Of a stretch of 64,000 nucleotides of DNA, positions 1-50,329 are shown in pieces; position 1 is the stretch's first letter, and every line of letters begins with the position of its first letter. Below the pieces are notes generated by a model. It had not been told where the DNA came from and ran no database searches. It saw nothing but the letters and a program-made list of their open reading frames with translations. The position numbers and the translations under genes are program-made. Origin of the DNA: Heterodontus francisci. Lineage: Eukaryota. The DNA lies in NCBI RefSeq assembly GCF_036365525.1, contig NW_027141363.1, positions 186,001 to 250,000 on the forward strand. Reading direction: 5' to 3'.

Positions 1-47
1 CTGTACTTTATATTAACATTAAACATCTTTGTGTCACTCAATCACAG

Positions 48-674
48 ACTCTGCACTCACTGACCCGTGTGTAAATCATACAGTCCTGGACCAGCCCTGG
101 AGGAGCATCGATTGTACAGGGACTGAGTGCTCCGGTCAGGTGAAGTGTGATCGGTATCTTGTTCAAGGATGGTACAGATTTAACAGGTAATGTAAAGGAA
201 CAAATTCTGGGTAAATCAGTTAATGAGGGAGGATTAAGGGATTTCCCCCAGTTTCTGGTACTCTCTGCTGGTACCAGTCTCTCTAAAAATTAATATTTAC
301 CATCAGTTCAAGGACTGACTCTGTGATTGTTGTTTCAGTTCTGGTGGATGGAAGATTCCGGACACTGTTGTCCCAGATAGCCACTGCTCCACAAAGCGTC
401 CAGGCTGGTTACAGGGTAATTTCAGCCTTTATAATATCAGATTTACATTCACTGTCCAGCACTGTTCACATGGGTTACATTCTTCAATATTTATAAACTC
501 TCATTTCAGGTTCCCATCCCAGTGTGGGACAGGGGGAAGTAACACGGACAGTTTGTTTCAACAGGGATGGAAATCGCTGCCACAGGACCCAGAAAATAAA
601 GATCAAAAACTGCAGCAGTTATTTTGTTTATGCGCTGAAGCCTCCACCTGTCTGTAACGCTGCTTATTGCACAG
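48..674 (+). CDS. D8C/D10C (UMOD/GP2/OIT3-type) domain, copy 1 (exons 48-186, 339-415, 510-674)
   Basis: Spliced translation DPCVNHTVLDQPWRS..C..C....CD.....GWYRF...GGWKIPDT....HCST..PGWLQGSHPSVGQGEVTRTVCF.....C.....IKIKNCSSYFVYAL.....C..AYCT matches the GP2/UMOD decoy-domain motif pattern; canonical splice sites. Confidence 0.9.
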
Positions 675-3600
675 GTAGATTGCTGTTTGTATATGGTGCA
701 GATGGGTGATTCTGGGATGTCCCGTGTCACCCACAAAAATGAGACAGTTTACGCACTGCCCTCCTTTTTGTGAGGGACACAGTGAATATCGGATCTGTAA
801 AACAGGGTGAACACTTCACTAAAACTCTAGGGAACTGAACCAGATGCTCGCTGTCTGGAGAGAGGGCTGGCATGTCTGGGTATTATTCTGTCAAGAATGC
901 ACTTGAGGATTCAGGTTTTCTAGTGAGTGTCAGACACAGCAGCAGGATCCTGACAGACTCTATGTGAAGGGCAGTCACTCTCGTCTCACCTCTTGAGTTC
1001 CACTCTTTTGTCCGTGTTTGAACCACAGCTATGATGAGGTCTGGAGCTGAGTGACCCTGGCGGAGCACAAACTGACCATCACTGAACAGGTAATTGCTGA
1101 GCAAGTATCATTTGATAGCACTGTCGATGACACCTTCCATCATTTTACTGATGATAGAGAGTAGACTGATGGGACGGTAATTGGGTGGGTTGAACTTGCC
1201 CTGCTTTGACTTGTCATGCTTTTTATGCACAGGACATGCCTGAGCAGATTTACACATTGCAGGGTAGATGCCAGTGTTGTAGCTGTACCAGAATAGCTTG
1301 GCTCAGGATGCAACAAGTTCTGGAGCACAGGTCTTCAGTACTACTTCAGGGATATTGTCAGGGCCCATAGCATTTGCAGTATTCAATGCCTTCAGTCATT
1401 TCTTGATATCAGCTGGAGTGAATCGAATTGTCATCTGTGATGTTGGGGACTTCAGGAGCAGGCCGAGGTGGATCATCTACTCGGCACTTCTGGCTGAAGA
1501 TGGTTGCAAATGCTTGAGTCTTATCTTTCGCACTAATGTGCTGGGCTCCCTGATCTTTGAGGATGGGGATATTTCTGGGGCCTCCTCCTCCAGTTAGTTG
1601 TTTAATTATCTACTGCCCTTTATGACTGGATGTGGCAGGACTGCAGAGCTTAGATCTGATCCGTTGGTTATGGGATCGCTTAGCTCTGTCTATCACATGC
1701 TGCTTCTGCTGTTTGGCACGCAGATTGTCCTGGGTTGTAGTTTCACCAGGCTGACACCTCATTTTGAGGTATGCCTTGTGCTGCACTTTACATGCCCTCC
1801 TGCACTTTTCATTGAACCATGTTTGGTCTCCTGGCTTGATGGTCATGATAGAGTGGGGAATATACCGGACCATGAGGTTACAGATTGTGGTTGAGTACAA
1901 TTCTGCTGCTGTTGTTGTTCCCACAGCACCTCATGGATGCCCATTGTTGCATTGCTAGATTTGTTTGAATCTATCCCATTTAGCATGGTGATAGTGCCAG
2001 ACAACACGATGGATGGTATCCTCAATGTAAAGGCGGGACTTCGTCTCCACAAGGACTGTGCGGTGGTCACTCCTACCAATACTGTCATGGATATGTGGCA
2101 GGCAGATTGGTGAGGATGAAGTCAAGTATATTTTCACCTTTTGTTGATTCTGTCATCATCTGCCACAGTCGCAGACTAGCAGCTATGTCCTTTAGGACTC
2201 AGCCAGCTCGGTCAGGAGTGGGCGGCAGTGATTGAGGGGAGTGGGATGTAGTGAATGTGGGGAGTGGGATGTCGTGACTGAGGGGAGGGGGATGCAGTGA
2301 CTGAGGGGAGTGGGATGCAGTGACTGAGGGGAGTGGGATGCTGTAATTGAGGGAAGTGGGATGTAGTGACTGATGAGTGAGATGTGGTAACTGATGGGAG
2401 TAGGATGTAGAGATGCGGGGAGTGATGTGCAGTGCTTGAAGGGAATGGTACGGAATGATTCGGTGGACCTTGTGTGGTAACATAGAGAAGTGGGATGCAG
2501 TTATTGAGGGGAGTAGGATGCCGTGACTGAGTGGAGTGGGATACACAGACTGAGGGGAGTGGGATGCAGTGACTGAGGGGAGCTGGATGCAGTGACTGAG
2601 GGGAGTGTGATATAGTGACTGAGGGGAGTGGAATACAGTGACTGTGGGGAGTGTGATGCAGTGACTGAGGGGAGTGTGATACAGTGACAGTGGGGAATGG
2701 GATACAGTGACTGAGGGGAGTGTGATACAGTGACTGAGGGGAGTGTGATACAGTGACTGAGGGGAGTGGGATACAGTGACTGAGGGGAGTGGAATACAGT
2801 GACTGTGGGGAGTGTGATACAGTGACTGAGGGGAGTGTGATACAGTAACTGAGGGGAGTGTGATCCAGTGACTGTGGGGAGTGGGATACAGTGACTGAGG
2901 GGAGTGGAATACATTGACTGAGGGGAGTGGAATACAGTGACTGTGGGGAGTAGGATACAGTGACTGAGGGGAGTGTGATACAGTGACTGAGGAGAGTGTG
3001 ATACAGTAACTGAGGGGAGTGGAATACAGTGACTGAGGGGAGTGGAATACAGTGACTGTGGGGAGTGGGATGCAGTGACTGAGGGGAGTGTGATCCCTTA
3101 CATTTATCTTCACATCCTCCTCGCTTTCACTTGTCACTTGAACTTTTCCCAGTTCTGATGTCAGGTCACATATTAACATTAAACATCTTTCTGTCACTCA
3201 GTCACAGACTCTGCACTCACTGACCCGTGTGTAAATCACACAGTCCTGGACCAGCCCTGGAGGAGCAGCGATTGTGATGTCACTGGGTGCTCCGGTCAGG
3301 AGAAGTGTGATGATAATCTTCACTTCGGATGGTACCTATTTAAAAGGTAATGTAAAGGAACAATTTCAGGGTAATCTAGTCAATATGGGCAGAGTAAGGG
3401 ACTTCCCCCAGTTTCTGGTCCTATTTGCTGGTACCAGTCTCTCTAACAGTTAATATTTACCATCAGTTCAGGGACTGACTCGATGATTGTTATTTCAGTT
3501 CTGGTGGATGGAAGATTCCGGAGACTGCTGTCCCACATCATCGCTGCTCCACAAATGTTACAGGCTGGTTACAAGGTAATTTCAGCCTTTATAATATCAG

Positions 3601-6600
3601 ATTTACATTCACTGTCCAGCACTGTTCACATGGGTTACTGTCTTCAATATTTATAAACTCTCATTTCAGGTTCCCATCCCAGCGTGGGACAGGGGGAAGT
3701 AACACGGACAGTTTGTTTATACTGGGGTAGAAAACACTGCGACAAGGTCCATGAGATAAAGATCAAAAACTGCAGCAGTTACTTCGTTTATGAGTTGAAG
3801 TCGTTGTTTCGTTGTGCTGCGTATTGTACAGGTACTTTGATGCTTCTATATCATCCAGAGGGTGAAACTGGGATGTCCCGTGTCACCCACAGAAATGAGA
3901 CAGTTTACTCGCTCCCCTCCTTATTGTCAGGGACACAGTGAATAAAGGATCTGAAACACAAAGTGTACTTCACTGAAACTCTAGGGAACTGAACCAGACT
4001 CTGCTGTCCCTGTCTCTCAGGCACTCTGATCCCTGCAGTGTTCATGGCTCACGTCAGGTCCCCACTGCAGTGCTGGGCACCTCACACTCCCTCTCCAGGA
4101 AACAATGTTCATGAAGAGTCGGATTGGATGGTCGAGTGTTTGATAAAGATGAAAATCTGACACTGTCTGGACTCGAGTACTTAATACATGAGCTCTTTGG
4201 GTTTTCTCCACTCTGCCCTCTTCCTTTATTACAGATCCAGAGACTGTCGAAACTGAGGAACCCGAGGAACAAACAACTCGAGAATCCACGAGGGGATCAT
4301 CGTCTACCCCTGCGGTGTCTGGAACATCAGGTACCCCCCTTGTGGGTCCATTCGAAACAGGTTCCACACCCAATGTTACATCATAGAAGATCAGTCCTGG
4401 AGATCATCCAGTCTCATACTGAGGGAAGTGGGATGGAGTGATTGAGGGAATTGGGATGAGTGACTGAGGGGAGTGGAATGTAGTGACTGAGGGGAGTGGA
4501 TGCGGTGACTGAGGGGAGTGGGATGGGGTGACTGAGGGGAGTGGGATGGGGTGACTGAGGGGAGTGGGATGTAGTGACTGAGTGGAGTGGGATGTAGTGA
4601 CTGAGGGGAGTGGGATGTGAACAAAGAACAAAGAACAAAGAAAATTACAGCACAGGAACAGGCTCTTCGGCCCTCCAAGCCTACGCCGATCCAGATCCTC
4701 TATCTAAACCTGTCGCCTATTTTCTAAGGGTCTGCATCTCTTTATTTCCTGCCCATTCATGTATCTGTCTAGATACATCTTAAAAGACGCTATCGTGCCC
4801 GCGTCTACCACCTCCACTGGCAATGCATTCCATGCACCCACCACCCTCTGCGTAAATAACTTTCCACGCATATCTCCCCTAACCTTTTCCCCTTTCTCTT
4901 TGAACTCGTGTCCCCTTGTAATTGAATCCCCCACTCTGGGAAAAAGCTTCTAGCTATCCACCCTGTCTATACCTCTCATGATTTTGTGCACCTCAATCAT
5001 GTCCCCCCTCAAGCTCCTTCTTTCTAATGAAAATAATCCTAATCTACTCAACCTCTCTTCATAGCTAGCGCCCTCCAAACCAGGCAACATCCTGGTGAAC
5101 ATCCTCTGCACCCTCTCCAAATCATCCACATCCTTTTGGTAATGTGGCGACCAGAACTGCACGCAGTATTCCAAATGTGGCCGAACCAAAGTCCTATACA
5201 ACTGTAACATGACCTGCCAACTCTTGTACTCAATGACCCGTCCGATGAACGAAAGCATGCCGTATGCCTTCTTGACCACTCTATTGACCTGCGTTGCCAC
5301 CTTCAGGGAACAATGGACCTGAACACCCAAATCTCTCTGTACATCAATTTTCCCCAGGACTTTTCCATTTACTGTATAGTTCACTCTTGAATTGGATCTT
5401 CCAAAATGCATCACCTCGCATTTGCCCTGATTGAACTCCATCTGCCATTTCTCTGCCCAACTCTCCAATCTATCTATATTCTGCTGCATTCTCTGACAGT
5501 CCCCTTCACTATCTGCTACTCCACCAATCTTAGTGTCGTCTGCAAACTTGCTAATCAGACCACCTATACTTTCCTCCAAATCATTTATGTATATCACAAA
5601 CAACAGTGGTCCCAGCACGGATCCCTGTGGAACACCACTGGTCACACGTCTCCATTTTGAGAAACTCCCTTCCACTGCTACTCTCTGTCTCCTGTTGCCC
5701 AGCCAGTTCTTTATCCATCTAGCTAGTACACCTTGGACCCCATGCGCCTTCACTTTCTCCATCAGCCTACCATGGGGAACCTTATCAAACGCCTTACTGA
5801 AGTCCATGTTTCCGACATCTACAGCCCTTCCCTCATCAATCAACTTTGTCACTTCCTCAAAGAATTCTATTAAGTTGGTAAGACATGACCTTCCCTGCAC
5901 AAAACCATGTTGCCTATCACTGATAAGCCCATTTTCTTCCAGATGGGGATAGATCCTATCCCTCAGTATCTTCTCCAGCAGCTTCCCTACCACTGACGTC
6001 AGGCTCACCGGTCTATAATTACCTGGATTATCCCTGCTACCCTTCTTAAACAAGGGGGCAACATTAGCAATTCTCCAGTCCTCCGGGACCTCACCCGTGT
6101 TTAAGGATGTAGCAAAGATATCTGTTAAGGCCCCAACTATTTCCTCTCTCGCTTCCCACAGTAACCTGGGATAGATCCCATCCGGACCTGGGGACTTGTT
6201 CCACGTTAATGCCTTTTAGAATACCCAACACTTCCTCCCTCCTTATGCCGACTTGACCTAGAGTAATCAAACATCTGTCCCTAACCTCAACATCCGTCAT
6301 GTCCCTCTCCTCGGTGAATACCAATGCAAAGTATTCATTTGGAATCTCACCCATTTTCTCTGACTCCACACATAACTTTCCTCCTTTGTCCTTGAGTGGG
6401 CCAATCCTTTCTCTAGTTACCCTCTTGCTCCTTATATATGAATAAAAGGCTTTGGGATTTTCCTTAACCCTGTTTGCCAATAATATTTCATGACCCCTTT
6501 TAGCCCTCTTAATTCCTCGTTTCAGATTGTGCCTACAATCCCGATATTCTTTCCAAGCTTCGTCATTCTTCAGCCGCCTAGACCTTATGTATGCTTCCTT

Positions 6601-9600
6601 TTTCCTCTTAGCTGGTCTCACAATTTCACCTGTCATCCATGGTTCCCTAATCTTGCCATTTCTATCCCTCATTTTCACAGGAACATGTCTCTCCTGCACG
6701 CTAATCAACCTCTCTTTAAAAGCCTCCCACATATCAAATGTGGATTTACCTTCAAACAGCTGCTCCCAATCTGCATTCCCCAGCTCCTGCCGAATTTTGG
6801 TATAGTTGTCCTTCCCCCAATTTAGCACTCTTCCTTTAGGACCACTCTCGTCTTTGTCCATGAGTATTCTAAACCTTACGGAATTGAGATCACTATTCCC
6901 AGAGTAGTCCCCTACTGAAACGTCAACCACCTGGCCCGGCCCATTCCCCAACACCAGGTCCAGTATGGCCCCTTCCCGAGTTGGACTATTTACATACTGC
7001 TCTAGAAAACCCTCCTGCATGCTCCTTACAAATTCTGCTCCATCTAGACCTCTAACACTAAGTGAATCCCAGTCAATGTTGGGAAAATTAAAATCTCCTA
7101 TCATCACCACCCTGTTGATCTGACAGCTTTCCATAAACTGACTGAGTGGACTGTGATGTCGTGATTGAGGGGATTGGGATGTAGAGAATGCGGGGAGTGG
7201 CATGCAGTGATTGAGGAGAGTGGGATGATGTAATTGAGGGGAGTGGGATGTAGTGAAGGAGGGGAGTGGGATGACGTAATTGAGGGGAGTGGTATGCAGT
7301 GACTGAGGGGAGTGGACTGATGCAATTGAGGGGAGTGTGATTGAGCGACTGAGGGGAGTGGGATGCAGTGACGGAGGGGTGTGGGATGATGCAGTTGAGG
7401 GGAGTGGGATGATTCAATTGAGGGGAGTGGGATGCCGTGACTAAGGGGAGTGGGGTGCAGTGACTGCGGGGCGTGGGATGCATTGACTGAGGGGAGTGGG
7501 ATGCAGTGACTGAGGGGAGTGGGATGATGTAATTGAGGGGAGTGGCATGCAGAGACTGAGAGGAGTGGGATGCAGTGGCTGAGGGGAGTGGGATGGAGTG
7601 ACTGAGGGGAGTGGGATGGGCTAACTGAGGGGAGTGGGATGCAGTGACTGAGGTGCATGGGATGCAGTGACTGAGGGGAGTGGGATGATGTAATTGAGGG
7701 GAGTGGGATTTCGAGACTAAGGGGATTGAGAAGATATGATTGAAGGGAGTGTGATTCAATGACTGAGGGCAGTGACATTTTATGACTGGGTAAAATGTAA
7801 TGCAGTTCCTGTGCCAACTGGGATACAGTGAGTGTGGACATGTGGATTGTCTCACAATGGTTTTTATATACACTAGCATCTGTGATTTACTGTACTCTAA
7901 TCTATCCAGTTCGAACTTTCTCTCACTCCTTCCCTCCCCCATGTTTCTTTCCCTTTATTACACATCCAGAGACTTCAACAACCTCAAGAACCAAGGAGCA
8001 AACAACTCCACACTCCATTGAGAAATCACCATCTAACCCAATCGATACTTTCACCTCAGGTATCAGTTTTATGTTGTTCAATCGGGACGGGTTGATTCTT
8101 ACACTGACTGCCTGATTTGGGTGAATGGAATCTACCGCACAGGAAGAGGCCACTCGGCCCCTCTTGCTACTCCTCTTCATCTAACCTTTTCCTTCCTTTT
8201 CCTTTCTCCCTCAGGTGTTTAACCAGATTTACCTTAAATTTCATTTCCCTCGACCATTCAGGATTAATTCTACATTCTCACTACACCTTGGTGTACTTGT
8301 CCATAGTTCACTGAAGGCAGCAGCACAGGTCGATCATGTGGTTTGGAAGGTATATGGGATACTTGCCTGTCTTAGCCGAGGCACAGAATATAAGAGCAGG
8401 GCGGTTATGATGGAGCTGTACAAAACGCTAGTTTGGCCACAGCTGGAGTACTGAGAACAGTTCTGGGCACCACAATATAGGAAGGATGTGATTGCACTGG
8501 AGAGGGTGCAGAGGAGATTCACCAGGAGGTTGCCTGGGCTGGAGCATTTCAGCTGAGAAAAGAGGCTGGATAGGCTATGGTTGTTTACCTTAGAGCAGAG
8601 AAGGCTGAGGGGGGACCTGATTGAGGTATACAAAATTATGAGGGGCATTGATCGGTTAGATTGGAAGAAACTATTTCCCTTAGCGGAGGGGTCAGTAACC
8701 AGGAGGAATAGACTTAAGATAAAAGGCAAGAGGTTTATAGGCGATTTGAGGAAACAGATTTTCACCCTGAACACACTGTCTGAAGAGGTGGTAGAGGCAT
8801 GAACCCTCACAACATTTAATAAGTATTTAGATAAGCACTTGAAACGCCGCAGCATACATGATTACGGGCCAAGTGCTGGAAAATGGGATTAGAATAGCGA
8901 CGTGCTTGATGATCGGCATGGACACGATGGGCCGAAGGGCCTGTTTCCATGCTGTATAATTGTATGAGTCTAGGGCTGTGACGCACTTTTGAGTAAAGAG
9001 GCTTCCTCTGAAATCACCACTGGATTTACTTGTGACAGTTTTATTTTCTATCCCTCTCTCTCCACCCTCCTCTCCCACTACCTCTTTCTGCACTTCCTGT
9101 CAGTATCTCTTTTGCTCTCTGTGTATCTTTCTCTTTATATCTCTATATTTGCTCTCTCTCTCACTGCCATTTTCACTCAGTCTCTGTCTATCTCTATCTG
9201 ACAATTTCGTTTTCCCTCTGTCTCTCTCTTTATCTCTGTAACTCACTGCTCTCCCCCTTTCGCTTCTTCTCTCGCTGTCTGTATCTGTTGCTCTCACTCT
9301 CGGACTCTTTCTTGATCTCTCACATTTTCTATCGCTCTCTTTCTTCTCATTTTTCTCTCCCTCTGTTGCCCTCTTTCACTCTGTCTCCCACTCTCACTGT
9401 CTCTAACTCTCACACATTATCTCTCACTCGCAGTGACTGAGGGCAGTGGGATGCATTGACTGATGGGAGTGGGATGCATTGACTGAGGGGAGTGGGATGT
9501 AGTGACTAAGGGGAGTGCAATGTAAAGGCAGAGGGATGGTGGGGTGTAGTGACTGAGAAGAGTGGGATAGACTGATGGAGGTGAACGGGATGCAATGACT

Positions 9601-12600
9601 GAGGGGACTGGGATGGAGTGGCTGAGCGGAGTTGTGTGAAAGGTTTGAGGGGAGTGAGTTGCAGTGAATGAGGGGAATGGAATACTGTGACTGATATTAG
9701 ATCCAGAGAGTGAGGGAGAGTGGGATGCCGTGACTGAGGGCAGTGCGATGGCCTGACTGAGGGAGTGGGATGTTGTGACTGAGGGAAGTGGGAGTGCGAG
9801 TTAGAGCCTGAGAGGAGTGGGATGTAGTGACAGAGGGAGGTGGGATGCAGTGACTGAGGGGAGTGGGATAGACTGACGGAGCTGAGTGGGATGTAGTGAC
9901 CTATGGGAGTGGGATGCGGTGACTGAGGGGAGTGGAATGTAGAGACCGAGGGTTGTGGGTTACACAGGCTGAGGGGAGTGTAATACAGTGACTGAGGGGA
10001 GTGTGATACAGTGACTGAGGGGAGTGGGATACAGCGACTGAGGGGAGTGGGCAAAAGCGACTGAGGGGAGTGGGATACAGCGACTGAGGGGCATGGGACA
10101 CAGCGACTGAGGGGAGTGGGATACAGTGACTGAGGTGAGTGGGATACAGTAATGTAGTGATAAGGATGGAAGATGATGGATTTATAAAGATTGATATCTC
10201 ACTTTCTCCTGACACTCGTACCATCCTGTTGAAATGTTGTGTTTTTCTCCATCTCTCACTCTGCAATGTTTGCCTCCCTTTCTAACAGAGCCCATGACTT
10301 CCCAAACTCAGGAATCCGAGGAACAATCGACTGGAGAATCCATTGAGGTTTCATCCTCTATCCTAGTGGGCTCTGGAACCCCAGGTATCTGCCGTGCCGG
10401 ACTATAATTACAGAATGATGGAATCAGAGACTGGTTACAGCACAGAAAGAGGCCATTCAGCCCATCGTCACCGTGCCAGCTCTCTGCCAGAGCAATCCAC
10501 CTACTCGCTCTCCTGCCATTTCCCCATCACCCAGCAGACTGTTTCTCCTATGATAATTTTCCAATTCCCTTTTGAAAGCCTCAATTGAACCTGCCTCCAG
10601 CGCACTCTCAGGCAGTGCACTCCAGACCCTAACCACTCGCTGTGTGAAAAGGTTTTCCTGTCTCTGTTGCTACTTTTACCACTCACCTAAAACCGGTGTC
10701 CTCTGGTTCTGGATTCTCCCACCAATGGGAACAGTTTCTCCCTGTCTGCTCTGTCCACATCCCTCGTGATTTTGAAAACCTCGATCAAATCTTCTCTTAA
10801 TCTTCTCTTCTCCAGGGAGAACAGCCCCATCTTCTCCAATCTATCCAAGTAACTGACGTCCCTCATCCTGGGAAACATTCTTGTAAATCATCTCCGCACC
10901 CTCTCGAATACCTTAACATCCTTTCTAAGTATTAACCGCTCTCTCGACCTGTCTTGCCACCTTCAATGATCTGTGCACATGTGCCCCCAGGTCCCTCTGC
11001 CCCTGCACCCCTTTACAATTGTATCCTTTATTTTATATTGCCTCTCCTCCTTCTTCCGACCAAAATGCATCACTTCACAATTCTCTGCATTAAATTTCAT
11101 CTGCCACTTGCCTGCCCATTCCACAGGTCTGCCTAAGTCCACTTGAAGTCCATCACTATCCTTCTCACTGTTCACAACACTTCCAGGTCTTGTGCCCTCC
11201 ACAAATAAGGTTGTTGAGCTGCAGGCGCAGATAGCCACGTGGAAATATGCTGTTGTGGCAATAACCGAGTCCTGGTTCTAAGAGAGGCAGGACTGGGTAG
11301 TGAATATTCCTGACTACAAGGTGTTCAGGAAAGAGAGGGGAGGAAGGAAAGGAGGAGGGGCATCAGTATTGTTTAAGGGGAGAATTACAGTGCTGGAAGG
11401 AGATGATGTCGCAGAGGAACCAAGGATAGAATCCATCAGATTAAAGTGAAACAACAAAAGAAATACCATGACCTTTCTGGGTGTATGTTCTAGGCCAACA
11501 ACTAGTGGGAAAGATATAGATGAACAGATTTGCATAGAGCAACCAAGAGATGCAAGAGTTAAAGTGTAGATATATCATTGGGCAATAATTATCTGAATAT
11601 AGTCTGGAATAGTAATAGTGTAAAGGGCACAGAGGGACAAGAGTTTCTCGAATATGTTCAGGAGAATTTCCTACGTCAGTTTGTTTCCAGTCCAACGAGG
11701 AAGGAGGCATTGCTGGATCTGATTCTGGGAAATGAGGTTGGACAAGTGAATTAAGGGTCAGCCGGGGAACATTTGGGGACAGTGACCAGCGTATCATATG
11801 GTTTAGGTTGGCAATGGAAAGTGACAAGGAGAAATCCAGAGGAAAGATAATTCATTGAGGGAGAACCAATCTCAATAGAGTGAGAACAGATCTGACCCAA
11901 ATAATCTGGAATCATATTACAGAGTCCCACACTGTGACGCCTGAAGTGCTCATTCCAAGAGACGCATCCAGTCTCTTAATGATGGAGTGTGGGGCAATGA
12001 TAGAGGGCAGTTGGAAAACAGTGACTGAGGGGAGAGGGATCTCGTGACTGAGGGGGGCGGGGTGGGATGCAGTGACCGAGGGGATTGGGATGCAGTGACT
12101 GAGGGCAGCGGGACATAGTGACTGAGGGCAGTGGGACATAGTGACTGAGGGCAGTGAGATTTAGTGACTGAAGGGAGTGTGATGTATTGACTGTGCGCAT
12201 TGGGATACAGTGACTGAGGAGATTGGGATACAGTGACTGAGGAGATTGGGATACAGTGTCTGAGGGGAGTGTGATGCAGCAACTGAGGGGAGTGTGATAC
12301 AGTCAATGAGGGGAGAGCGATACAGTGACTGAGGGAACGGTGATACAGTGACTGAGGGAAGTGTGATACACTGACTGAGGGAAGAGCGATACAGTGAGAA
12401 AGGGGAGTGTGATACAGGGACTGAGGGAGTGTGACATAGTGACTGAGGGGAGAATGATACAGCGACTGAGGGGAGTGTGATACAGCGACTATGGCAGTGT
12501 GATACAGTGACTGAGGGGAGTGTGATACAGGGACTGAGGGGAGTGGAATACAGTGACTGAAGGGAGTGTGATACAGTGACTGAGGGGATGGGACACAGTG

Positions 12601-15600
12601 ACTGAGGGGAGTGTGATACAGTGACTGAGGGGATGGGACACAGTGACTGAGGGGAGTGTGATGCAGCGACTGAGGAGAGTGTGATACAGCGACTGAGGGG
12701 CGTGTGATTCAGTGACTGAGGGGAGTGTGGAACAGTGACTGAGAGGAGTGTGATACATTGACTGAGGGGAGTGCGATACAGTGACTGAGGGGAGTGGGAT
12801 CGGGCGACTGAGATGACTGTGATACAGTGACTGAGATGAGTGTGATGCAGTGACTGAGGGGAGTGTGATAGAGACAGAGGGGAGTGTGACGCCGTGACTG
12901 AGGGGAGTTTGACACAATAATGTAGTGAACAGATGGAAGATTATGGTTTTATAAAGATTGATATCTGACATTCTCCTGACACTAGTACCATCCTTTTGAC
13001 CTGTTGTGTGTTTCTCCGTGTCTCACTCTGCAATGTCTCCCTCCCTTTATTACAGAACCCGTGACTTACGAAACTCAAGAATCCGAGGAACAATCGACTG
13101 CAGAATCCACTGAGGGGCCCTCCTGTATCCCAGCGGGCTCTGGAAGCTCAGGTATCTGCCTTGTGGGGTTATCATCGCAGAATCATGGAATCATAAACCG
13201 GTTACAGCACAGAAAGATGCCGTTCAGACAATCGTCACCGTGCCAGCTCTCTGCCTGAGCAACTCAACTGCTCCCACTCCCGCTCCCACTCCCACTCCCA
13301 CTCATTTCCCCATCTCCCTGCAGATTGTTTCTCCTATGATAATTATCCAATTCCCTTTTGAAAGCCTCAATTGAACCTGCCTCCAGCACACTCTCAGGCA
13401 GTGCATTCCAGACCCTAACCACTCGCTGTGTGAAAAGATTTTCCTGACTCTGTTGCTACTTTTACCACTCACTTAAAGCCAGTGCCTTCTGGTTCTGGAT
13501 TCTCCCACCAATCGGAACAATTTCTCCCTGTCTACTCTGTCCACATCCCTCGTGATTTTGAACATCTCGGTCAAAACACCTCTTAATCTTCTCTTCTCCA
13601 GGGACAAGAGCCCCAGTTTCTCCAATGTATCCATGTAACTGACGTCCCTCATCCCAGGAACCATTCTCGTAAATCATTTCCGCACCCTCTCGAATACCTT
13701 CACAGCCTTCCTAAGTATTAACCGCTCTCTCGACCTGTCTTGCCACCTTCAATGATTTGTGCACACGTCCGCCCAGGTCCCTCTGCCCCTGCACCCCCTT
13801 TGCAATTGTATCCTTTATTTTCTATTGCCTCTCCTCGTTCGTCCGACCAAAATGAATCACTTCACAATTCTCTGCGTTAAGTTTCATCTGCCACTGTCTG
13901 CCAATCCCACCAGCCTGTCTATAACCCCCTGACGTCTATCACTATCCTCCTCACAGTTTACAATACTTCCAGGTTTTGTGTCATCTGCAAATTTTGAAAT
14001 TGTGGCATGTACACCCCAGTCTATGTCATTAATATACATCAGGGAAAACAGGGGTCCGAGCAATATTACAGAGCAAAACACAGATGTACAGAGAATTAGG
14101 AGGGACAGATAACACTGGAGTAGAAAAGAGTAACGTATTAGACAGGGACAGTGTAAGAGGGAAGGTGATGAGCTGTAAATTCAGTTCAATGTGTGTGTAT
14201 ATGAGAATGCAATGAGAGTGGTAAAAAAGGTTGTTGAGCTGCAGGCGCAGATAGCCGTGTGGAAATATGCTGTTCTGGCAATAACAGAGTCCTGGCTCTA
14301 AGAGGGGCAGGACCTGGTAGTGAATATTCCTGACTACAAGGTGCTCAGGAAAGGGAGGGATGGAAGGAAAGGAGGAGGGGTATCAGTATTGATAAAGAGG
14401 AACATTACAGTGCTGGAAAGAGATGATGTCGGAGAGGAACCAAGGATAGAATCCATCAGATTAGAATGAAACAACGAAAGAAATACCATTACCTTTCTGG
14501 GTGTATTCTATAGGCCAACAAGTAGTGGGAAAGATATAGAGGAACAGATTTGCATGGAGCAACCAAGAAGTGCAAGAGTTAAAGTGTAGATATATCGTTG
14601 GGCTTTAGTTATCTGAATATAGACTGGGATAGTAATAGTGTAAAGGGCAGAGAGGGACAAGAATTTCTAGAGTGTGTCCAGAAGTATTCCCTCCGTCAGT
14701 TTGTTTCCAGTCCAACGAGGAAGGAGGCATTACTGGATCTGGTTCTGGGAAATGTGGTTGGATAAGTGAATTATGGGTCAGTCGGGGAACATTTAGGGGA
14801 CAGTGACCATCATATCATGTGGTTTAGGTTGGCAATGGAAAAGGATAATGAGAAATCCGGAGGAAAGATAATTCATTGAGGGAGAACCAATCTCAGTAGA
14901 GTGAGAACAGATCTGACCCAAATAAACTGGAATCATATTATAGACACACATAGTGTGATACCTGACGTGCTCAGTCTCAGTGACCCATCCAGTCTCTTAC
15001 TGATGGAGTGTGGGGAAATGACAGAGGGCAGTGGGATATAATGACCGAGGGGAGTGGGATGTACTGTCTCAGGGGTGAAGGATGTAATACTGAGGGGAGA
15101 GGGATATAGTGACTGTGGGCAGTGGGATATAGTGAGTGAGGGGAGAGGGATGCAGTGACTGAGGGGAATGGGACATCGTGACTGAGGGGAGTTGGATATA
15201 GTGACTGTGGGCAGTGGGACATAGTGATTGAGGGTACTGTGATAAAGTGACTGAGGGGAGTATGATACAGTCACTGAGGGGAGTGGGATGCTGCGACTGA
15301 GGACTGTTTGATAGTGTGACTATGGGGAGTGGGATACAGTGACTGAGAGGAGTGTGAAACAGTGACTGAGAGAGTGTGATGCAGTGACTGAGGGGCGTGT
15401 GATGCAGTGACTGAGGGGAGTGTAATACAGCGACTGAGGAGAGTCTGATACAGCGACTGAGGGGAGTGAGATACAGCGACTGGCGTGTGTGTGATACAGT
15501 GACTGAGGTGAGTGTGATACAGTGAGTGAGGGGAGTGTGATATAGGGACTGAGGTGATTGTGATAGAGTGACTGAGGGGAATGTGATACAGTGACTGAGG

Positions 15601-18600
15601 GGAGTGTGATATAGTGACTGAGGTGAGTGTGATGCAGTGACTGAGGGGAGCGTGACGCCGTGACTGAGGGGAGTGTGACACAGTAATGTATTGAACAGGA
15701 TGGAAGATTATGGATTTGTAAAGATTGTTATCTGTCATTCTCCTGACACGAGCACCATCCTGTTGACCTGATGGGTGTTTCTCCATGTCTCACTTGGCAA
15801 TGTCTCCCTCCCTTTATGACAGAACCCGTGACTTCCCAAACTCAGGAATCCGAGGAACAATCGACTAGAGAATCTACTGAGGTTTCATCCTCCACCCCAG
15901 CGGGCTCTGGAAGCTCAGGTACCTGCCTTGTGGGGTCATCATTGCAGAATCATGGAATCAGAGACTGGTTACAGCACAGAAAGAGCCTGTTGAGCCCATC
16001 GTCACTGTGACAGCTCGATGCCTGTGCAACTAACCTACTCCCACTCCTGCTATTTCCCCGTCGCACTGCAGATTGTTTCGCCAATGACAATTTTCCAATT
16101 TCCTTTTGAAAGCCTCAATTGAACCTACCTCCAGCACACTGTCAGGCAGTGCATTTCAGATCCTAACCACACGCTGTGTGAAAAGGTTTTACTGTCTCTG
16201 TTGTAATTTTTACCACTCACCTAAAACCGGTGCCCTCTAGTTCTGGATCCTCCCACCAATGGGACTTAGGGCTGTGGGATATAGTGAGTGAGGGGAGAGG
16301 GATGTAGTGACTGAGGGGAGTGGGACATAGTGACTTAGGGTAGTGGGATATAGTGAGTGAGGGGAGAAGGATGTAGTGACTGAGGGGAGTGGGACATAGT
16401 GACTGAGGGGAGTGGGATGTAGTTACTGAGGGCAGTAGGACATAGTGATTGAGGGCAGTGGGAAATAGTCATCGAGGTGTGCGGAACATAGTGACTGAGG
16501 GCAGTGGAATATAATGAATGAGGACAGTGGGACATATTGTCTGAGGGCAGAGGGATATAGTCATTGTGGGGAGTGGGATATAGTCATTGGGGGCAGTGGG
16601 ACATAGTCACTGAGGGCAGTGGGACATAGTGACTGAGGTCAGTGGGATATAGTCATTGAGGGGAGTGGGATATAGTCATTGAGGGCAGTGGGACATAGTC
16701 ACTGAGGTGAGTGTGATATAGTGACTGATGGGATAGGTATGCAGTGATTGAGGGCAGTGGGATATAGTGACTGAGGGCAGTGGTATGTATTCACTGCACG
16801 GAGTGGGATGTGGTAGCTGCGGAGAGTGGGATGCAGTGACTGAGGTGAGTGGGATACAGTGACTGAGGGGAGTGGGATACAGCGACTGAGGGTAGTATGA
16901 TACAGTGACTGAGGGGAGTGTGACACAGTGTCTGAGGGGAGTATGATACAGTCACTGAGGGGAGTGTGATGCAGCGACTGAGGGTAGTGTGATCCAGTGA
17001 CAGAGGGAGTGTGAAACAGTGACAGAGGGGAGTGTGATGCAGTGACTGAGGGGAGTGTGATGGAGACTGAGGGGAGCGTGACGCCGTGACTGAGGGGAGT
17101 GTGACATAGTAATGTAGTGAACAGGATGGAAGATAATGGTTTTATAAAGATTGTTATCTGTCATTCTCCTCACACGAGCACCATCCTGTTGACCTGATGT
17201 GTTTTTCTCCATGTCTCACTTTGCAATGTCTCCCTCCATTTATAACAGAACCCGTGACTTCCAAAACTCAGGAATCCGAGGAACAATCGACCAGAGAATC
17301 TACTGAGGTTTCATCCTCCACCCCAGCGGGCTCCGGAAGCTCAGGTACCTGTCTTGTGGGGTCATCATCGCAGAATCATGGTATCAGAGACTGGTTACAG
17401 CACAGGAAGAGGCCATTGAGCCCATCGTCACCGTGACAGCTCTATGCCTGTGCAACTCACCTACTGCCACTCGGGCCATTTCCCCGTCGCACTGCAGATT
17501 GTTTCTCCTATGACAATTTTCCAATTCTCTTTTGAAAGCCTCAATTAAACCTGCCTCCAGCACACTCTCAGGCAGTGCATTTCAGATCCTAACCACACGC
17601 TGTGTGAAAAGATTTTCCTGTCTCTGTTGTGACATTTACCACTAACCTAAAACCGGTGCCCTCCAGTTCTGGATCCTCGCACCAATGGGACTCAGGGGAG
17701 TGGGACATAGTTACTGAGGGGAGAGGGATGCATTGACTGAGGGGAGAAGGTTGCACTGACCGAGGGGAGTGGGATATAGTGACTGAGGGAAGTGGGACAT
17801 AGTGACTGAGGGCAGTGGGATATAGTGAGTGAGGGGAGAGTGATGTAGTGACTGAGGGAAGTGGGACATAGTGACTGAGGGGAGTGGGATGTAGTGACTG
17901 AGGGAAGTTGGACATAGTGATTGAGGGCAGTGGGATGTAGTGACTGAGGGGAGTGAGACATAGTGAATGAGGGGAGAGGGATATAGTGACTGTGGGGAGT
18001 GGGACAAAGTGACTGAGGGGTGTGGGATATAGTTATTGAGGGCAGTAGGACATAGTGATTGAGCGCAGTGGGATATAGTCAGTGAGGGGCGAGGGATATA
18101 GTGACTGAGGGGAGTGGGACATAGTGACTGAGGACAGTGGGACATAGTGACTGAGGGCTGTGGGATATAGTGACTGAGGGGATTGGGATATAGTCATTCA
18201 GGGCAGTGGGACACAGTGACTGAGTGCAATGGTACATAGTGACTGAGGGCAGAGGGACATAGTGACTGAGGTGAGTGGGACATAGTCACTGAGGTGAGTG
18301 GGATATAGTCATTGAGGACAGTGGGACATAGTGACTGAGGGCAGTGGGATACAGTGAGTGAGGGGAGAGGGATATAGTGACTGTGGGGAGTGGGACAAAG
18401 TGACTGAGGGGAGTTGGATTTAGTTACTGAGGGCAGTAGGACATAGTGATTGCGCGCAGTGGGATATAGTCATTGAGGGGCGAGGGATATAGTGACTGAG
18501 GGGAGTGGGATATAGTCATTGAGGGCAGTGGGACACAGTGACTGAGGGCAATGGTACATAGTGACTGAGGGCAGTGGGACATCGTGACTGAGGTGAGTGG

Positions 18601-38029: not shown

Positions 38030-39980
38030 GCAATTTATAATACTGTCGCACCTTTAATGTAATAAAACCTGCCAAGGCTCTTCACAGGAGCATTATAAAC
38101 ACAGTATGAAACTGAGTGACATAAGGAAAGATTCGGTCAGACAATCAAAATCTCAGTCAAAGAGGTAAGTTTTAAGGAGAATTTTAAATTGAAAAGTGAG
38201 GTGGAGAGGCGGAGAGGTGTAGCGACGCAATTCCAGAGCTTAGGCCGCAGGCAACTGAAGGTGTGACCACCAATGGTTGAACAATTAAGGTCGGGGATGC
38301 TTAAAGGGCCAGAATTAGAGGAGTGCAGAGATTCCGGAAGGTTGTAGAGGCTGGAGGACGTTACAGCGATAGGGAGGGCTGTAGGTGCTGATGAAGGTTA
38401 CAGAGAGAGGGATGGCTGTCGGAGCTGGTGGATGTTACAGAGATAGGGAGGGTTGTAGGAGCTGGTGGAGGTTACAGAGATAGGGAGGGATGTAGGAGCT
38501 GGTGGAGGTTAAAGAGATAGGGAGTGCTGTTGGAGCTGGTGGAGGTTACAGAGATAGGGAGTGCTGTAGGAGCTGTTGGATATTACAGAGATAGGGAGGG
38601 TTGCAGAGACTGGTGGAGATTACAGAGATAGGGAGGGTTGTTGGAGATGGTGGAGGTTACAGAGATAGGGAGGGTTGTAGAGACTGGTGGAGGTTACAGA
38701 GATAGGGAGGGTTGTAGGAGCTGGAGGAGGTTAACGCGATAGGGAGTGTTGTAGAGACTGGTGGAGGTTACAGAGATAGGGAGAGCTGTACGAGCTGGTG
38801 GATGTTACAGAGATAGGGAGGGTTGTTGGAGCTGGAGGAGGTTAACGCGATAGGGAGGGTTGCAGAGACTGGTGGAGATTACAGAGATAGGGAGGGTTGT
38901 TGGAGATGGTGGAGGTTACAGAGATAGGGAGGGTTGTAGAGACTGGTGGAGGTTACAGAGATTTGGAGGGTTGTAGGAGCTGGAGGAGGTTAACGCGATA
39001 GGGAGTGTTGTAGAGACTGGTGGAGGTTACAGAGATAGGGAGAGCTGTACGAGCTGGTGGAGGTTACAGAGATAGGGAGGGTTGTAGAGACTGGTGGAGG
39101 TTACAGAGATAGGGAGAGTTGTAGAGACTGGTGGTGATTACAGAGATAAGGAGGATTGTTGGAGCTGGTGGAGGTTACAGAGATAGGGAGGGCTGTCGGA
39201 GCTGGAGGAGGTTAACGCGATTGGAAAGGTTGTAGAGACTGGTGGAGGCTACAGAGATAGGGAGGATTGTTGGAGCTGGTGGAGGTTACAGAGATTGGGA
39301 GGGCTGTTGGAGCTGGAGGAGGTTAACGCGATAGGGAGGGTTGTAGAGACTGGTGCAGGTTACAGAGATAGGGAGGGCTGTAGGAGCTGGTGGATGTTAC
39401 AGAGATAGGGAGGGCTGTAGGAGCTGAGGAGGTTAACGCAATAGGGAGGGTTGTAGAGACTGGTGCAGGTTACAGAGATAGGGAGGGCTGTAGAAGGTCA
39501 ACGCGATAGGGAGGGGAAGGGCCATGGGGGATTTGAGGACAAGGACAAGAAACTTAAAATGTGGATGTTGCTTGACTGGGAGACAATGTAGGGCAGTGAG
39601 AGCAGGAGTGACAGGGGATCAGGACTTGGAGCAACTTAAGACACAGGCAGAAGAGTTTTAGATGACCTCAGGTTTACAGAAATTGGGTGAGCATCAGGAC
39701 TGCCTTGACATTGTCAAGTCTAGAGCTGACAATGTCTTGAATGAGGGTTTCAGCCACATTTCAGCTGAAATTGGGGCGCGTTCGGGTGATCTTACAGAGG
39801 TGGAAATGTGCAGCGTTAGTGATGGTGCCTACATGAGGTCAGAAGCGCATCTCGGCATCAAATGTGGCACCAGGATTTCGAACAGACTGGCTTAAACTCA
39901 GACCGCTGCCGGGGAGAGAGGTAGAGTCAGTAGTTAAGGAATGGAGTTTGGAGCGGAAACTGAAAACAGTAGCTTCAGTT
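38030..39980 (-). mobile_element. L2-like LINE fragment split by a 37-bp tandem array
   Basis: LSQSVRNPGATFDAEMRF peptide at ~39840-39900; L2-like 3' sequence at 38030-38340. Confidence 0.65.
38340..39510 (+). repeat. 37-bp tandem repeat (ggttacagagatagggagggttgtagagactggtgga)n
   Basis: About 30 visible units. Confidence 0.95.
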
Positions 39981-50220: not shown

Positions 50221-50329
50221 AATTTTACAGAACAATGAAAACCATGTTTTTTTAATCAATATTGGTGAAGTCTGATGGGTTTCCTGGTCCTAGCTCGCCC
50301 TCTGCTGTCCCCCTGGAGGAGAAAACCCC

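What the first reader, a model, noticed from the sequence alone, without database searches (positions are those of the whole stretch)
48..3831. Two tandem D8C domains: near-identical introns, strongly diverged protein
The 94-bp intron between the 2nd and 3rd exons differs at only 2 positions between copies. By manual count the domains differ at about 36 of ~127 residues with only ~8 purely synonymous codon changes. Changes cluster in inter-cysteine loops (FNRDGNRCHRTQK vs LYWGRKHCDKVHE; PPPVCN vs SLFRC; DSHCSTKRP vs HHRCSTNVT). Inference: diversifying selection on a ligand-binding surface, as expected for a microbe-binding or immune decoy protein. Mammalian GP2/UMOD carry a single such domain.
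Basis: partly seen in the sequence, partly recalled or inferred. Interest (0 to 1): 0.78.

Follow-up and report, generated by a model that had tools for sequence, protein, structure and literature searches.

The report
Diverged twin D10C heads, shark gene
Two neighbouring uromodulin/GP2-type "head" domains of an intact horn-shark mucin-like gene share a strictly conserved framework but differ sharply in four short blocks; this hints at selection for new binding surfaces but does not prove it.

Summary
Intron 2 is 92 of 94 identical. There are 36 amino-acid differences and 8 purely synonymous codon changes in 123 whole aligned codons. "Near-identical introns" holds for intron 2 only: intron 1 is 133/151 and the downstream intron 143/167 identical, like the exons.

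The two units are the D1 and D2 heads of an intact Heterodontus francisci gene: two D10C heads, eight 90-96-nt stalk exons and a 3-exon tail ending at 34032. It belongs to a large shark-and-ray family without a ZP module, predicted in databases. This scan had already found the family on four other pieces of this genome.

Whole-domain dN/dS is 0.70 (bootstrap 0.42-1.23), so it is not above 1. I then classed sites independently, by variability in 120 domains of other species:
- The variable class has dN 0.62, 4.6 times the intron divergence (p=4e-9) and 2.8 times the dS of conserved codons (p=0.006). Against its own dS, omega is 1.56 and not significant.
- The framework has omega of about 0.1.
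- Blocks L2 and L3 fit positive selection. L4 and part of L1 look like segmental replacement.

Intron 2's identity is local (permutation p=0.016), so either a short conversion tract or constraint. No paralogue DNA could be fetched, so site models were not run. Verdict: partly supported.

The parts
48..186 (+). D1 head, exon A (139 nt). The family-typical acceptor 6 nt upstream reads AA instead of AG at 40-41. An in-frame AG at 46-47 remains.
   Evidence: The peptide aligns to GP2 7p6r (E 1.8e-5) from the DPC motif to GWYRF. Paralogue contigs read G at position 41 (table 3).
339..415 (+). D1 head, exon B (77 nt); holds block L2
   Evidence: Weak Pfam D8C_UMOD match, 12.8 bits, profile positions 11-30.
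416..509 (+). D1 intron 2 (94 nt), 92/94 identical to 3576-3669
   Evidence: No RNA structure (z +0.62) and no Rfam match.
510..674 (+). D1 head, exon C (165 nt); holds blocks L3 and L4
   Evidence: Pfam D8C_UMOD 28.0 bits, cut-off 27. UMOD 6tqk E 1.5e-7 and GP2 7p6r E 2e-7.
3202..3346 (+).
   Evidence: paralogues read ...YCT-VT-DSALTDPC across the D1-D2 joint.
3499..3575 (+). D2 head, exon B (77 nt); gains an N-V-T sequon
3576..3669 (+). D2 intron 2 (94 nt)
3670..3831 (+). D2 head, exon C (162 nt, one codon shorter than in D1)
   Evidence: Pfam D8C_UMOD 21.9 bits.
4235..22280 (+). Acidic Ser/Thr/Pro stalk. Eight phase 1-1 exons: 4235-4330, 7970-8059, 10289-10384, 13056-13151, 15823-15918, 17249-17344, 20554-20649, 22185-22280. 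A dead remnant lies near 30552-30648.
   Evidence: The first four exons are in RefSeq model P0108.
32234..34032 (+). Conserved C-terminal tail, three exons (about 32235-32296, 33205-33290, 33937-34032 with the stop codon)
   Evidence: tblastn with the tail of paralogue P0010: 21/21, 26/30 and the last 31 residues matched. Splice sites were read. No Pfam family.
870..3094 (.). Intron between D1 and D2: a high-copy interspersed element (about 870-2220) followed by a 23-nt minisatellite (2215-3094)
   Evidence: summed word depths up to 1.36 million in run X1.

Best explanation
The two units are the first (D1-type) and second (D2-type) D10C heads of one intact horn-shark gene. The predicted protein is secreted. 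It has two uromodulin/GP2-type heads, an acidic stalk that is probably O-glycosylated and is built from repeated 96-nt exons, and a small conserved tail. It has no ZP module.

The heads are old duplicates. The same D1-type and D2-type blocks recur in at least four paralogous genes of this genome. The framework is under strong purifying selection: 66 codons, including all 10 cysteines and a sequon at the place of GP2 Asn65.

Four blocks carry nearly all the change, and the same columns are hypervariable across sharks and rays.
- Blocks L2 and L3 flank the positions of the C3-C6 disulfide, which this family has lost. L3 is the beta-E/beta-F hairpin. In these two blocks, amino-acid-changing point substitutions run about 2.5-3 times ahead of synonymous and intron divergence. 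I read that as positive selection on one surface patch.
- Block L4 and part of L1 carry a codon deletion, whole-codon changes and high synonymous divergence. They look like segmental replacement by complex mutation or micro-conversion.

The near-identity of intron 2 is a local feature, most likely a short conversion tract of about 110 nt. It is not a general contrast between introns and exons.

Shown: the anatomy, the counts, family membership, the fold of a paralogue, and the rate contrasts.
Inferred: selection, secretion, glycosylation and any binding role.
For: Anatomy
- All 17 exons are open and have AG/GT sites.
- Paralogues P0010 and P0161 show signal peptide, D1, D2, stalk and tail.

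D10C identity
- Pfam; PDB sequence matches.
- The AlphaFold model of paralogue P0161 (mean pLDDT 82.7) matches GP2 7p6s (TM-target 0.83, rmsd 2.0) and UMOD 9nu1_S (0.91, rmsd 1.3).

Rates by block
- Framework: pN 0.02 against pS 0.15, with introns at 0.124.
- L2: pN 0.32, pS 0.10.
- L3: pN 0.40, pS 0.15. Twelve of 13 codons are replaced, 10 of them by a single base. The third position differs synonymously in 1 of the 12 replaced codons.
- L3 pN against framework pS p=0.017; against introns p=2e-4.

Variable site class, set in advance from other species
- pN 0.42 against introns p=4e-9, and against conserved-class pS p=0.006.
- Columns that differ between the heads have mean entropy 2.44 bits against 0.90 for the rest, over 120 domains of other species (Mann-Whitney p=3.5e-12).

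Segmental replacement
- Seven codons differ at all three positions, against 0.23 expected at the intron rate (p=5e-9).
- L4 has pS 0.70.

Age and structure
- D1/D2 type blocks are shared by P0010, P0161, P0164 and P0108.
- C3 and C6 align to Val and Arg. Cys is present at those columns in 0 and 1 of 127 family domains.
- In GP2 this disulfide joins the L2 and L3 regions, and the UMOD hairpin is a known protein-binding epitope (PMC8930769, passages).
Against: - Whole-domain omega is 0.70 with an interval that spans 1.
- No block's pN differs significantly from its own pS: p=1.0, 0.25, 0.39 and 0.10. L3 has only 6.5 synonymous sites.
- The tests against framework synonymous sites and introns assume equal age and mutation rate along the unit. 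Conversion would break that assumption.
- I drew the four blocks after seeing the data. Only the entropy class is independent.
- Two sequences allow no site model.
- Replaced positions are not enriched in coil, and exposure was not measured.
- The D1/D2 types are old, so the changes may be ancient specialisation rather than continuing diversification.
- RNA-like runs carry letters of a paralogue, not of this copy. Expression of this gene and the D1-to-D2 splice are therefore not shown.
Confidence: 0.5

Rival explanations
1. Relaxed loops plus concerted evolution. The loops are merely unconstrained and much older than they look. Gene conversion between D1 and D2 keeps resetting the introns and framework. 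Strongly diverged loop segments block or escape conversion. The excess of loop change over 'neutral' divergence is then a clock artefact, and no positive selection is needed.
For: - Intron 2 with its flanks is nearly identical.
- Paralogue P0161 has almost the same L1 and L2 in its D1 and D2, which shows D1-D2 exchange in this family.
- Synonymous divergence inside the variable class is raised (pS 0.31 against 0.19), and in L4 it is 0.70.
- In the ML tree the D2 type groups with the last domains of Mustelus and orectolobiform proteins (UFboot 94 / SH-aLRT 97). That would make the split far older than 12-15% divergence suggests.
Against: - Framework pS (0.15) and intron divergence (0.12-0.14) agree with each other, and outside intron 2 they show no mosaic of young tracts.
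- L2 and L3 have background-level synonymous change (pS 0.10 and 0.15).
- The AU test does not reject a single horn-shark clade (p=0.18), so the great age is not established.
- The loops keep their length and their cysteine register across 127 domains.
Confidence: 0.25
2. Mutational artefact. Clustered multi-base changes arise from complex events such as small indels with compensating shifts, template switching, slippage, or micro-conversion from other family members. They are merely tolerated in loops. Codon-based rates then overcount events.
For: - 14 of 44 changed codons differ at 2 or 3 positions, 7 of them at all three.
- L4 carries a codon deletion, and the D2 version there contains a short direct repeat (read).
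- A gapped nucleotide alignment of the exon A cluster and of L4 places paired indels.
Against: - L3 shows the strongest contrast, and 10 of its 12 replaced codons change by a single base.
- The same columns are hypervariable in 120 domains of other species. That points to site-specific tolerance or selection rather than chance events.
Confidence: 0.15
3. This particular copy, or at least its D1 head, is decaying or unused. The divergence would then be early pseudogene drift.
For: - RefSeq model P0108 omits D1 and starts inside a repeat element.
- The family-typical acceptor before D1 reads AA instead of AG.
- D2 has Leu for the 92%-conserved Arg of GWYRF. The matching UMOD residue R204 is a disease site (PMC8930769, passages).
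- RNA-like contigs match a paralogue, not this copy.
Against: - All 17 exons are open, an in-frame AG lies 6 nt downstream of the lost acceptor, and all 10 cysteines are present in each head.
- Only 2 replacements fall in the 66 framework codons. That is purifying selection, not drift.
Confidence: 0.05

Closest known systems
D10C (formerly D8C) domain of the decoy module of human GP2 and uromodulin (PDB 7P6R/S/T, 7PFP, 7Q3N; Pfam PF23283)
   Same: - Sequence matches exon by exon.
- A paralogue's predicted fold superposes at TM-target 0.83-0.91.
- Cysteines C1, C2, C4, C5, C7, C8, C9 and C10 are in register.
- An N-x-T sequon sits at the place of GP2 Asn65 in both heads.
   Different: - There are two heads in tandem.
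- No beta-hairpin precedes D10C; paralogue D1 follows the signal peptide directly.
- The C3-C6 disulfide is lost, and a new cysteine pair sits in a 4-residue insertion of the loop before C2.
- No sequon stands at the place of UMOD Asn275 (0 of 127 family domains).
- There is no EGF domain, ZP module or anchor.
Zebrafish omcin family (omc5: five D10C + EGF IV + ZP + GPI; PMC11415648, abstract and sections 2.2 and 2.6 read)
   Same: - Tandem D10C domains.
- Lineage-specific expansion into clusters of paralogues.
- A proposed role in mucosal defence against bacteria.
   Different: - Omcins keep the ZP polymerisation module and a GPI anchor, and the authors describe them as teleost-specific.
- The shark gene instead has a mucin-like stalk and a small tail. 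It lies among V-set gene segments.
ZP-less D10C-stalk genes of sharks and rays. Database models are named 'uncharacterized', 'uromodulin-like', 'GP2-like', 'OIT3-like' or 'mucin-5AC-like', e.g. XP_067884563.1. The family was noted in four other windows of this scan.
   Same: - Same architecture and exon plan.
- The tail matches paralogue P0010 at 21/21 and 26/30 residues in its first two exons, and over the last 31 residues of its final exon.
- D2 is 92% identical to D2 of P0161.
   Different: This is one more copy. What this report adds is the D1-against-D2 rate analysis, the four hypervariable blocks and the disulfide rewiring.

Membership tests
D10C/D8C domain (UMOD/GP2/OIT3-like, Pfam PF23283) | Match to the Pfam D8C_UMOD profile above the gathering score (27 bits) | tested here: met
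   Searched exon by exon. D1 exon C scores 28.0 bits and D1 exon B 12.8 bits. D2 exon C alone scores 21.9 bits, below the cut-off. Paralogues P0161 and P0010 score 75.1 and 85.7 bits.
D10C/D8C domain (UMOD/GP2/OIT3-like, Pfam PF23283) | D10C fold as in GP2 7P6R/S/T | tested here: met
   Tested on database paralogue P0161, not on my own spliced model. Foldseek gives 7p6s TM-target 0.83, rmsd 2.0 and 39% identity, and 9nu1_S 0.91 and 1.3.
D10C/D8C domain (UMOD/GP2/OIT3-like, Pfam PF23283) | Ten conserved cysteines forming C1-C8, C2-C9, C3-C6, C4-C10 and C5-C7 (PMC8930769) | tested here: not met
   Eight of the ten are in register. C3 and C6 are replaced (Val/Ala and Arg/His). Two other cysteines lie in the loop before C2. 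Across the family, Cys stands at the C3 and C6 columns in 0 and 1 of 127 domains, and the extra pair is present in 116 of 127. The disulfide pairing itself was not tested.
Bipartite decoy module of GP2/UMOD | Disulfide-stapled beta-hairpin packed against D10C | tested here: not met
   In paralogues D1 starts right after the signal peptide. D2 follows D1 after two residues.
Bipartite decoy module of GP2/UMOD | High-mannose N-glycan in the groove (GP2 Asn65 or UMOD Asn275) | tested here: inconclusive
   Both heads have an N-H-T sequon at the GP2 Asn65 position; so do 53 of 127 family domains. None has a sequon at the UMOD Asn275 position. Glycan occupancy and type cannot be tested here.
ZP-module filament proteins (UMOD, GP2, omcins) | EGF IV plus ZP module plus a membrane anchor or cleavage site | tested here: not met
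   Pfam finds only D8C_UMOD in P0161 and P0010. The window's two larger tail exons, of three, match no family. The stop codon is at 34030-34032.
Shark and ray ZP-less D10C-stalk family | Signal peptide, then 1-5 D10C, an acidic Ser/Thr stalk of repeated phase-1 exons, and a conserved tail | tested here: met
   D1, D2, eight stalk exons and three tail exons are in the window. The signal-peptide exon lies before the window's start and could not be seen.
Genes under diversifying selection | dN/dS significantly above 1 for the gene or for a class of sites | tested here: inconclusive
   Whole domain 0.70 (0.42-1.23). The variable class set in advance gives 1.56, not significant against its own dS (p=0.32), but pN exceeds conserved-class pS (p=0.006) and introns (p=4e-9). 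Site models were not possible with two sequences.

The most novel reading that the evidence does not exclude
Sharks and rays may carry a germline-diversified family of soluble recognition or decoy proteins. After loss of the C3-C6 disulfide, the L2 segment and the beta-E/beta-F hairpin of the D10C head would have become a hypervariable protein-binding patch. Heads are stacked in D1/D2 types, shuffled by exchange between units, and amplified together with T-cell-receptor V segments. That would be a non-immunoglobulin diversified binder family living inside an antigen-receptor locus.
Probability: 0.2. Interest if true: 0.75.

Novelty: new variant of a known kind. Interest (0 to 1): 0.42.

Why it matters
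D10C is the part of uromodulin and GP2 that catches bacteria, and in mammals it is a single conserved domain. Here the same fold appears with a rewired disulfide pattern, in tandem, on a mucin-like stalk without the filament-forming module. Four blocks are hypervariable across a large shark-and-ray family.

If the L2/L3 patch is truly under positive selection, the family would be a candidate mucosal recognition or decoy system in the oldest jawed vertebrates. The D10C fold would then count as a scaffold that can evolve protein-binding diversity, not only present a glycan. Its position among T-cell-receptor V segments, with which it appears to have been copied, adds a question about how such loci grow.

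If the pattern is only relaxed loops plus conversion, this is an ordinary fast-evolving secreted glycoprotein.

Tried and rejected
The other locus collections hold no shark DNA, so PAML/HyPhy-type site tests and GENECONV across paralogues were not run.

2. Reads.
- Read laying on 1-4400 was swamped by the high-copy element at 870-2220. Only 15 of 573 joints and 40 of 587 variant places were listed.
- None of the expected splice joints was among those shown. None of the 40 listed variant places lies in either intron 2.
- So there is no conclusion on splicing or on conservation of intron 2 among paralogues.
- Exon bins are covered and pure-intron bins are near zero (736-882 and 3970-4116 read 0 in both runs; 3823-3969 reads 0.24 and 1.74) in the two runs guessed to be RNA. 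The letters there are those of a P0161-like paralogue.

3. An RNA element in intron 2: rejected (fold z +0.62; no Rfam match in 1-4400 other than a chance hit at E 0.62 inside the repeat element).

4. Loops as coil: rejected. Replaced positions are no more often coil than unchanged ones, and L3 is a beta-hairpin.

5. Dating the D1/D2 split before the shark orders: the ML tree suggests it, but the AU test does not reject a horn-shark clade (p=0.18).

6. Exon B alone against PDB found nothing useful.

7. Literature. Six searches found no paper on shark D8C/D10C genes. Of 14 papers that hold 'D8C' and 'shark', the 10 listed are unrelated. Zero papers hold uromodulin + skin mucus + shark. Subscription journals are not covered, and supplements were closed, so the omcin supplementary alignments were not seen.

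8. YN00 in Biopython failed on all three exons.
Full report
**What is there**

Two three-exon units lie on the + strand of the window.
- The first has exons 48-186, 339-415 and 510-674.
- The second has exons 3202/3208-3346, 3499-3575 and 3670-3831.
- Each unit is symmetric in phase (1-1), 381 and 378 nt counted from the downstream acceptor. Each is open, has AG/GT borders and encodes 10 cysteines.
- tblastn of every exon peptide against the window finds only itself and its twin (E<=1.2e-8). All other hits have E>=0.19, so there are two copies here and no third.

- A global alignment of the two units gives these identities: upstream 37 nt 35/37; exon A 122/136; intron 1 133/151 (+2 gap columns); exon B 66/78; intron 2 92/94; exon C 133/159; downstream intron 143/167 (+3 gap columns).
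- The two differences in intron 2 are adjacent (479-480).
- A codon alignment made exon by exon gives 123 whole aligned codons. It shows 36 amino-acid differences, a one-codon deletion in the second unit and exactly 8 purely synonymous codon differences.
The title overstates the contrast: only intron 2 is near-identical, and the other noncoding parts are as diverged as the exons.
- Intron 2 is more alike than chance allows. The binomial gives 4e-4 at the rate of the other introns. Permutation over 454 noncoding columns gives p=0.016 for such a window and p=0.007 for the longest identical run, 69 columns.
- Intron 2 has no predicted RNA structure (z +0.62) and no Rfam match.

**What the units are**

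I searched exon by exon and left the joined step out throughout.
- Exon C matches Pfam D8C_UMOD: 28.0 bits in the first unit, at the 27-bit cut-off, and 21.9 bits in the second.
- Exon C matches human uromodulin and GP2 chains at E 1.5e-7 to 8e-7. Exon A matches GP2 at 1.8e-5.
- A phmmer search of 1.84 billion representatives with exon C found 1143 proteins at E<=0.001. Many have several matched stretches, up to 17.
- The closest proteins are from sharks and rays. One of them, P0108 (XP_067883189.1, Heterodontus francisci), is RefSeq's model of this very locus. It starts inside a repeat element, omits the first unit, and runs through the second unit into four stalk exons.
- Other horn-shark proteins on other contigs (P0010, P0157, P0161, P0164, P0167) show the full plan: signal peptide, D1, D2, acidic Ser/Thr/Pro stalk, and a conserved tail of about 70 residues.
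- The window holds eight stalk exons of 90-96 nt in phase 1-1, from 4235 to 22280, and a dead remnant near 30552.
- It also holds three tail exons that match the P0010 tail: 21/21, 26/30 and the last 31 residues. The stop is at 34030-34032.
- The signal-peptide exon must lie before the window's start.
- Pfam sees nothing but D8C_UMOD in P0161 and P0010, and nothing in the window's tail exons. There is no EGF domain, ZP module or anchor.
- An AlphaFold model of paralogue P0161 (60-row alignment, mean pLDDT 82.7) superposes on the GP2 decoy module (7p6s: TM-target 0.83, rmsd 2.0) and on UMOD D10C (9nu1_S: 0.91, rmsd 1.3).

**How the domain departs from GP2/UMOD**

- The paper that defined D10C gives five disulfides: C1-C8, C2-C9, C3-C6, C4-C10 and C5-C7 (PMC8930769, passages read).
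- In the alignments, eight cysteines are in register. C3 and C6 are replaced as a pair (Val/Ala and Arg/His). Two new cysteines sit in a 4-residue insertion of the loop before C2.
- In 127 close family domains, Cys stands at the C3 and C6 columns in 0 and 1 cases. The extra pair is present in 116.
- Both heads keep an N-H-T sequon at the place of GP2 Asn65, the glycan that FimH binds. No family domain has a sequon at the place of UMOD Asn275.
- The beta-hairpin half of the GP2 decoy module is absent.

**Rates**

- NG86 counts summed over the three exons give S 79.0, N 290.0, Sd 17.5, Nd 47.5, dS 0.263, dN 0.185 and omega 0.70 (bootstrap 0.42-1.23; Fisher p=0.25).
- Per-exon ML gives 0.76, 2.02 and 0.66.
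- The average hides two very different site classes. To class sites without using this pair, I aligned 120 close D10C domains of other species and took the column entropy.
- Columns where the two heads differ have mean entropy 2.44 bits, against 0.90 for the rest (Mann-Whitney p=3.5e-12).
- The 36 codons with entropy >=2 bits give dN 0.617, dS 0.395 and omega 1.56. The other 87 give omega 0.26.
- The variable class's pN (0.42) exceeds the divergence of the introns other than intron 2 (44/355; p=4e-9) and the pS of the conserved class (0.19; p=0.006). It does not exceed its own pS (p=0.32).

**Four blocks, two kinds of change**

I split the domain into four blocks (L1 columns 20-39, L2 54-67, L3 88-100, L4 113-123) and a framework. 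This split was drawn after seeing the data.

| Part | Codons | Replaced | pS | pN |
|---|---|---|---|---|
| Framework | 66 | 2 | 0.15 | 0.02 |
| L1 | 20 | 9 | 0.29 | 0.30 |
| L2 | 14 | 8 | 0.10 | 0.32 |
| L3 | 13 | 12 | 0.15 | 0.40 |
| L4 | 10 | 5 | 0.70 | 0.34 |

- Framework synonymous divergence agrees with intron divergence (0.124).
- In L3, 10 of the 12 replaced codons changed by a single base. Only one shows a synonymous third-position difference. That is what point substitutions driven by selection would give.
- L4 and part of L1 look different. L4 has a codon deletion. Seven codons in the domain differ at all three positions, against 0.23 expected (p=5e-9). Synonymous positions there are as changed as the rest. 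This suggests segmental replacement or older ancestry.
- None of the block-wise contrasts with the block's own synonymous sites is significant. L3 has only 6.5 such sites.

**Where the blocks lie**

- In the P0161 model, L1 is a long coil before the GWYRF strand.
- L2 is the coil around C4.
- L3 is a beta-hairpin.
- L4 is the loop before the last strand.
- Replaced positions are not enriched in coil: 19 of 35 against 46 of 87, p=1.0.
- The tool returns no coordinates, so exposure could not be computed.
[quoted passage not shown] In UMOD that region is the epitope bound by Bence Jones light chains.
- L2 holds the C3 position and L3 the C6 position. In GP2 these two segments are tied together, so here they probably form one patch.
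- L4 begins at the column of UMOD Asn275, next to the glycan groove. These placements are inferences from alignment and the paper's text.

**Age and exchange**

- The D1-type and D2-type versions of L3 and L4 recur in P0010, P0161, P0164 and P0108. The split of the two heads is therefore older than the spread of the gene in this genome.
- L1 and L2 are mosaic. P0161 has nearly the same L1 and L2 in both heads. P0167 joins a D1-type exon A to D2-type exons B and C; that could be exchange or an exon-skipping gene model.
- A tree of 127 domains splits sharks from batoids. It puts horn-shark D2 with the last domains of Mustelus and orectolobiform proteins (SH-aLRT 95; UFboot 94 / SH-aLRT 97 in a 62-row careful tree).
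- The AU test does not reject a single horn-shark clade (p=0.18).
- The first head of the window is not in these trees, because I made no joined row. The second is represented by P0108.
- Rows below 140 bits (207 of 334 unique near-full domains) were left out.

**Reads**

- The best holders are runs of one sample of the same species. Two small runs are guessed to be RNA.
- Laid on 1-4400 at 80% likeness, those two runs cover the exon bins. In the pure-intron bins they read 0 at 736-882 and 3970-4116 and only 0.24 and 1.74 at 3823-3969.
- At every listed variant place in the exons, all of their depth carries the other letter. Those letters spell a P0161-like paralogue.
- The output was dominated by the repeat element at 870-2220. 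None of the expected splice joints is among the 15 of 573 joints shown.
- So family expression is likely, but expression of this copy and the D1-to-D2 joint are not shown.

**Reading**

- The anatomy is certain and ordinary for this family. The scan had already met the family on four other pieces of this genome. Those notes agree with what I found independently.
- New here is the rate picture: a frozen framework, four family-wide hypervariable blocks, and a rewired disulfide pattern.
- In L2 and L3, amino-acid change outruns every available neutral yardstick by 2.5-3 fold.
- I favour positive selection on that patch plus segmental replacement elsewhere (0.5).
- Relaxed loops with a conversion-reset clock (0.25), purely mutational clustering (0.15) and decay of this copy (0.05) remain open.
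- Intron 2 is best read as a short conversion tract or a constrained short intron. Its flanking exon ends each carry a synonymous difference (412 and 521), so any tract is only about 110 nt long.

**Known and new**

- Mammalian GP2 and UMOD have one D10C (PMC8930769).
- Zebrafish omcin5 has five, with EGF, ZP and a GPI anchor, and confers resistance to bacteria (PMC11415648; abstract and sections 2.2 and 2.6 read). Tandem D10C is therefore not new.
- The ZP-less stalked architecture is predicted in databases for many sharks and rays (95 proteins at E<=1e-20).
- I found no paper on it in six searches. Subscription journals and supplements were not searchable.
- Three V-set segments lie downstream in the window (52519-52728 minus strand; 57043-57255 and 62289-62504 plus strand). 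Earlier notes place the window in the TRB locus.

Noticed in passing
window 2215-3094, 4418-4618, 7139-7774, 9430-10150, 12018-12916, 15019-15684, 16263-17110, 17689-30538: A 23-nt G-rich minisatellite fills almost every intron of the gene. The last array spans 12.8 kb and encloses two stalk exons. It gives the region a GC skew of up to 0.6.
   Followed up: partly
window 870-2220: A very high-copy interspersed element lies in the intron between the two heads (summed word depth up to 1.36 million in one run). RefSeq model P0108 takes its first 37 residues or so from its end (about 2120-2225) and omits the first head. That looks like a mis-annotation.
   Followed up: partly
An in-frame AG remains at 46-47. 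Paralogue contigs read G at position 41.
   Followed up: partly
window 3336-3338: The second head has Leu in place of the Arg of the GWYRF strand. That Arg is conserved in 92% of 120 domains of other species. The matching UMOD residue R204 is a kidney-disease site (PMC8930769, passages). The change is unique to this copy among the horn-shark paralogues seen.
   Followed up: no
family alignment (127 domains), columns 22, 27, 33, 56, 94, 120: Disulfide rewiring across the shark and ray family. C3 and C6 are absent. An extra pair is present in 116 of 127 domains. C2 and C9 are present together in 49 and absent together in 61.
   Followed up: partly
window 3554-3562: The second head gains an N-V-T sequon in block L2 where the first head has K-R-P.
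   Followed up: no
window 52519-52728 (-), 57043-57255 (+), 62289-62504 (+): Three immunoglobulin V-set segments with the C...WYRQ...Y(Y/F)C pattern lie downstream of the gene (Pfam V-set, 32.5-37.6 bits).
   Followed up: partly
window 7970-8059 and about 30552-30648: One stalk exon is strongly diverged. Its ancestral acceptor is lost and an AG 7 nt further in is used. Another stalk exon has lost its 5' part to the minisatellite and is dead.
   Followed up: partly
protein P0167 (another contig of the same genome): Its single head joins a D1-type exon A to D2-type exons B and C. This is either a recombinant gene or an exon-skipping gene model.
   Followed up: no
window 38336-39493, 39983-41492, 50317-51350: Further tandem arrays of 37-nt, 33-nt and 36/110-nt units, the last A-rich.
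   Followed up: no
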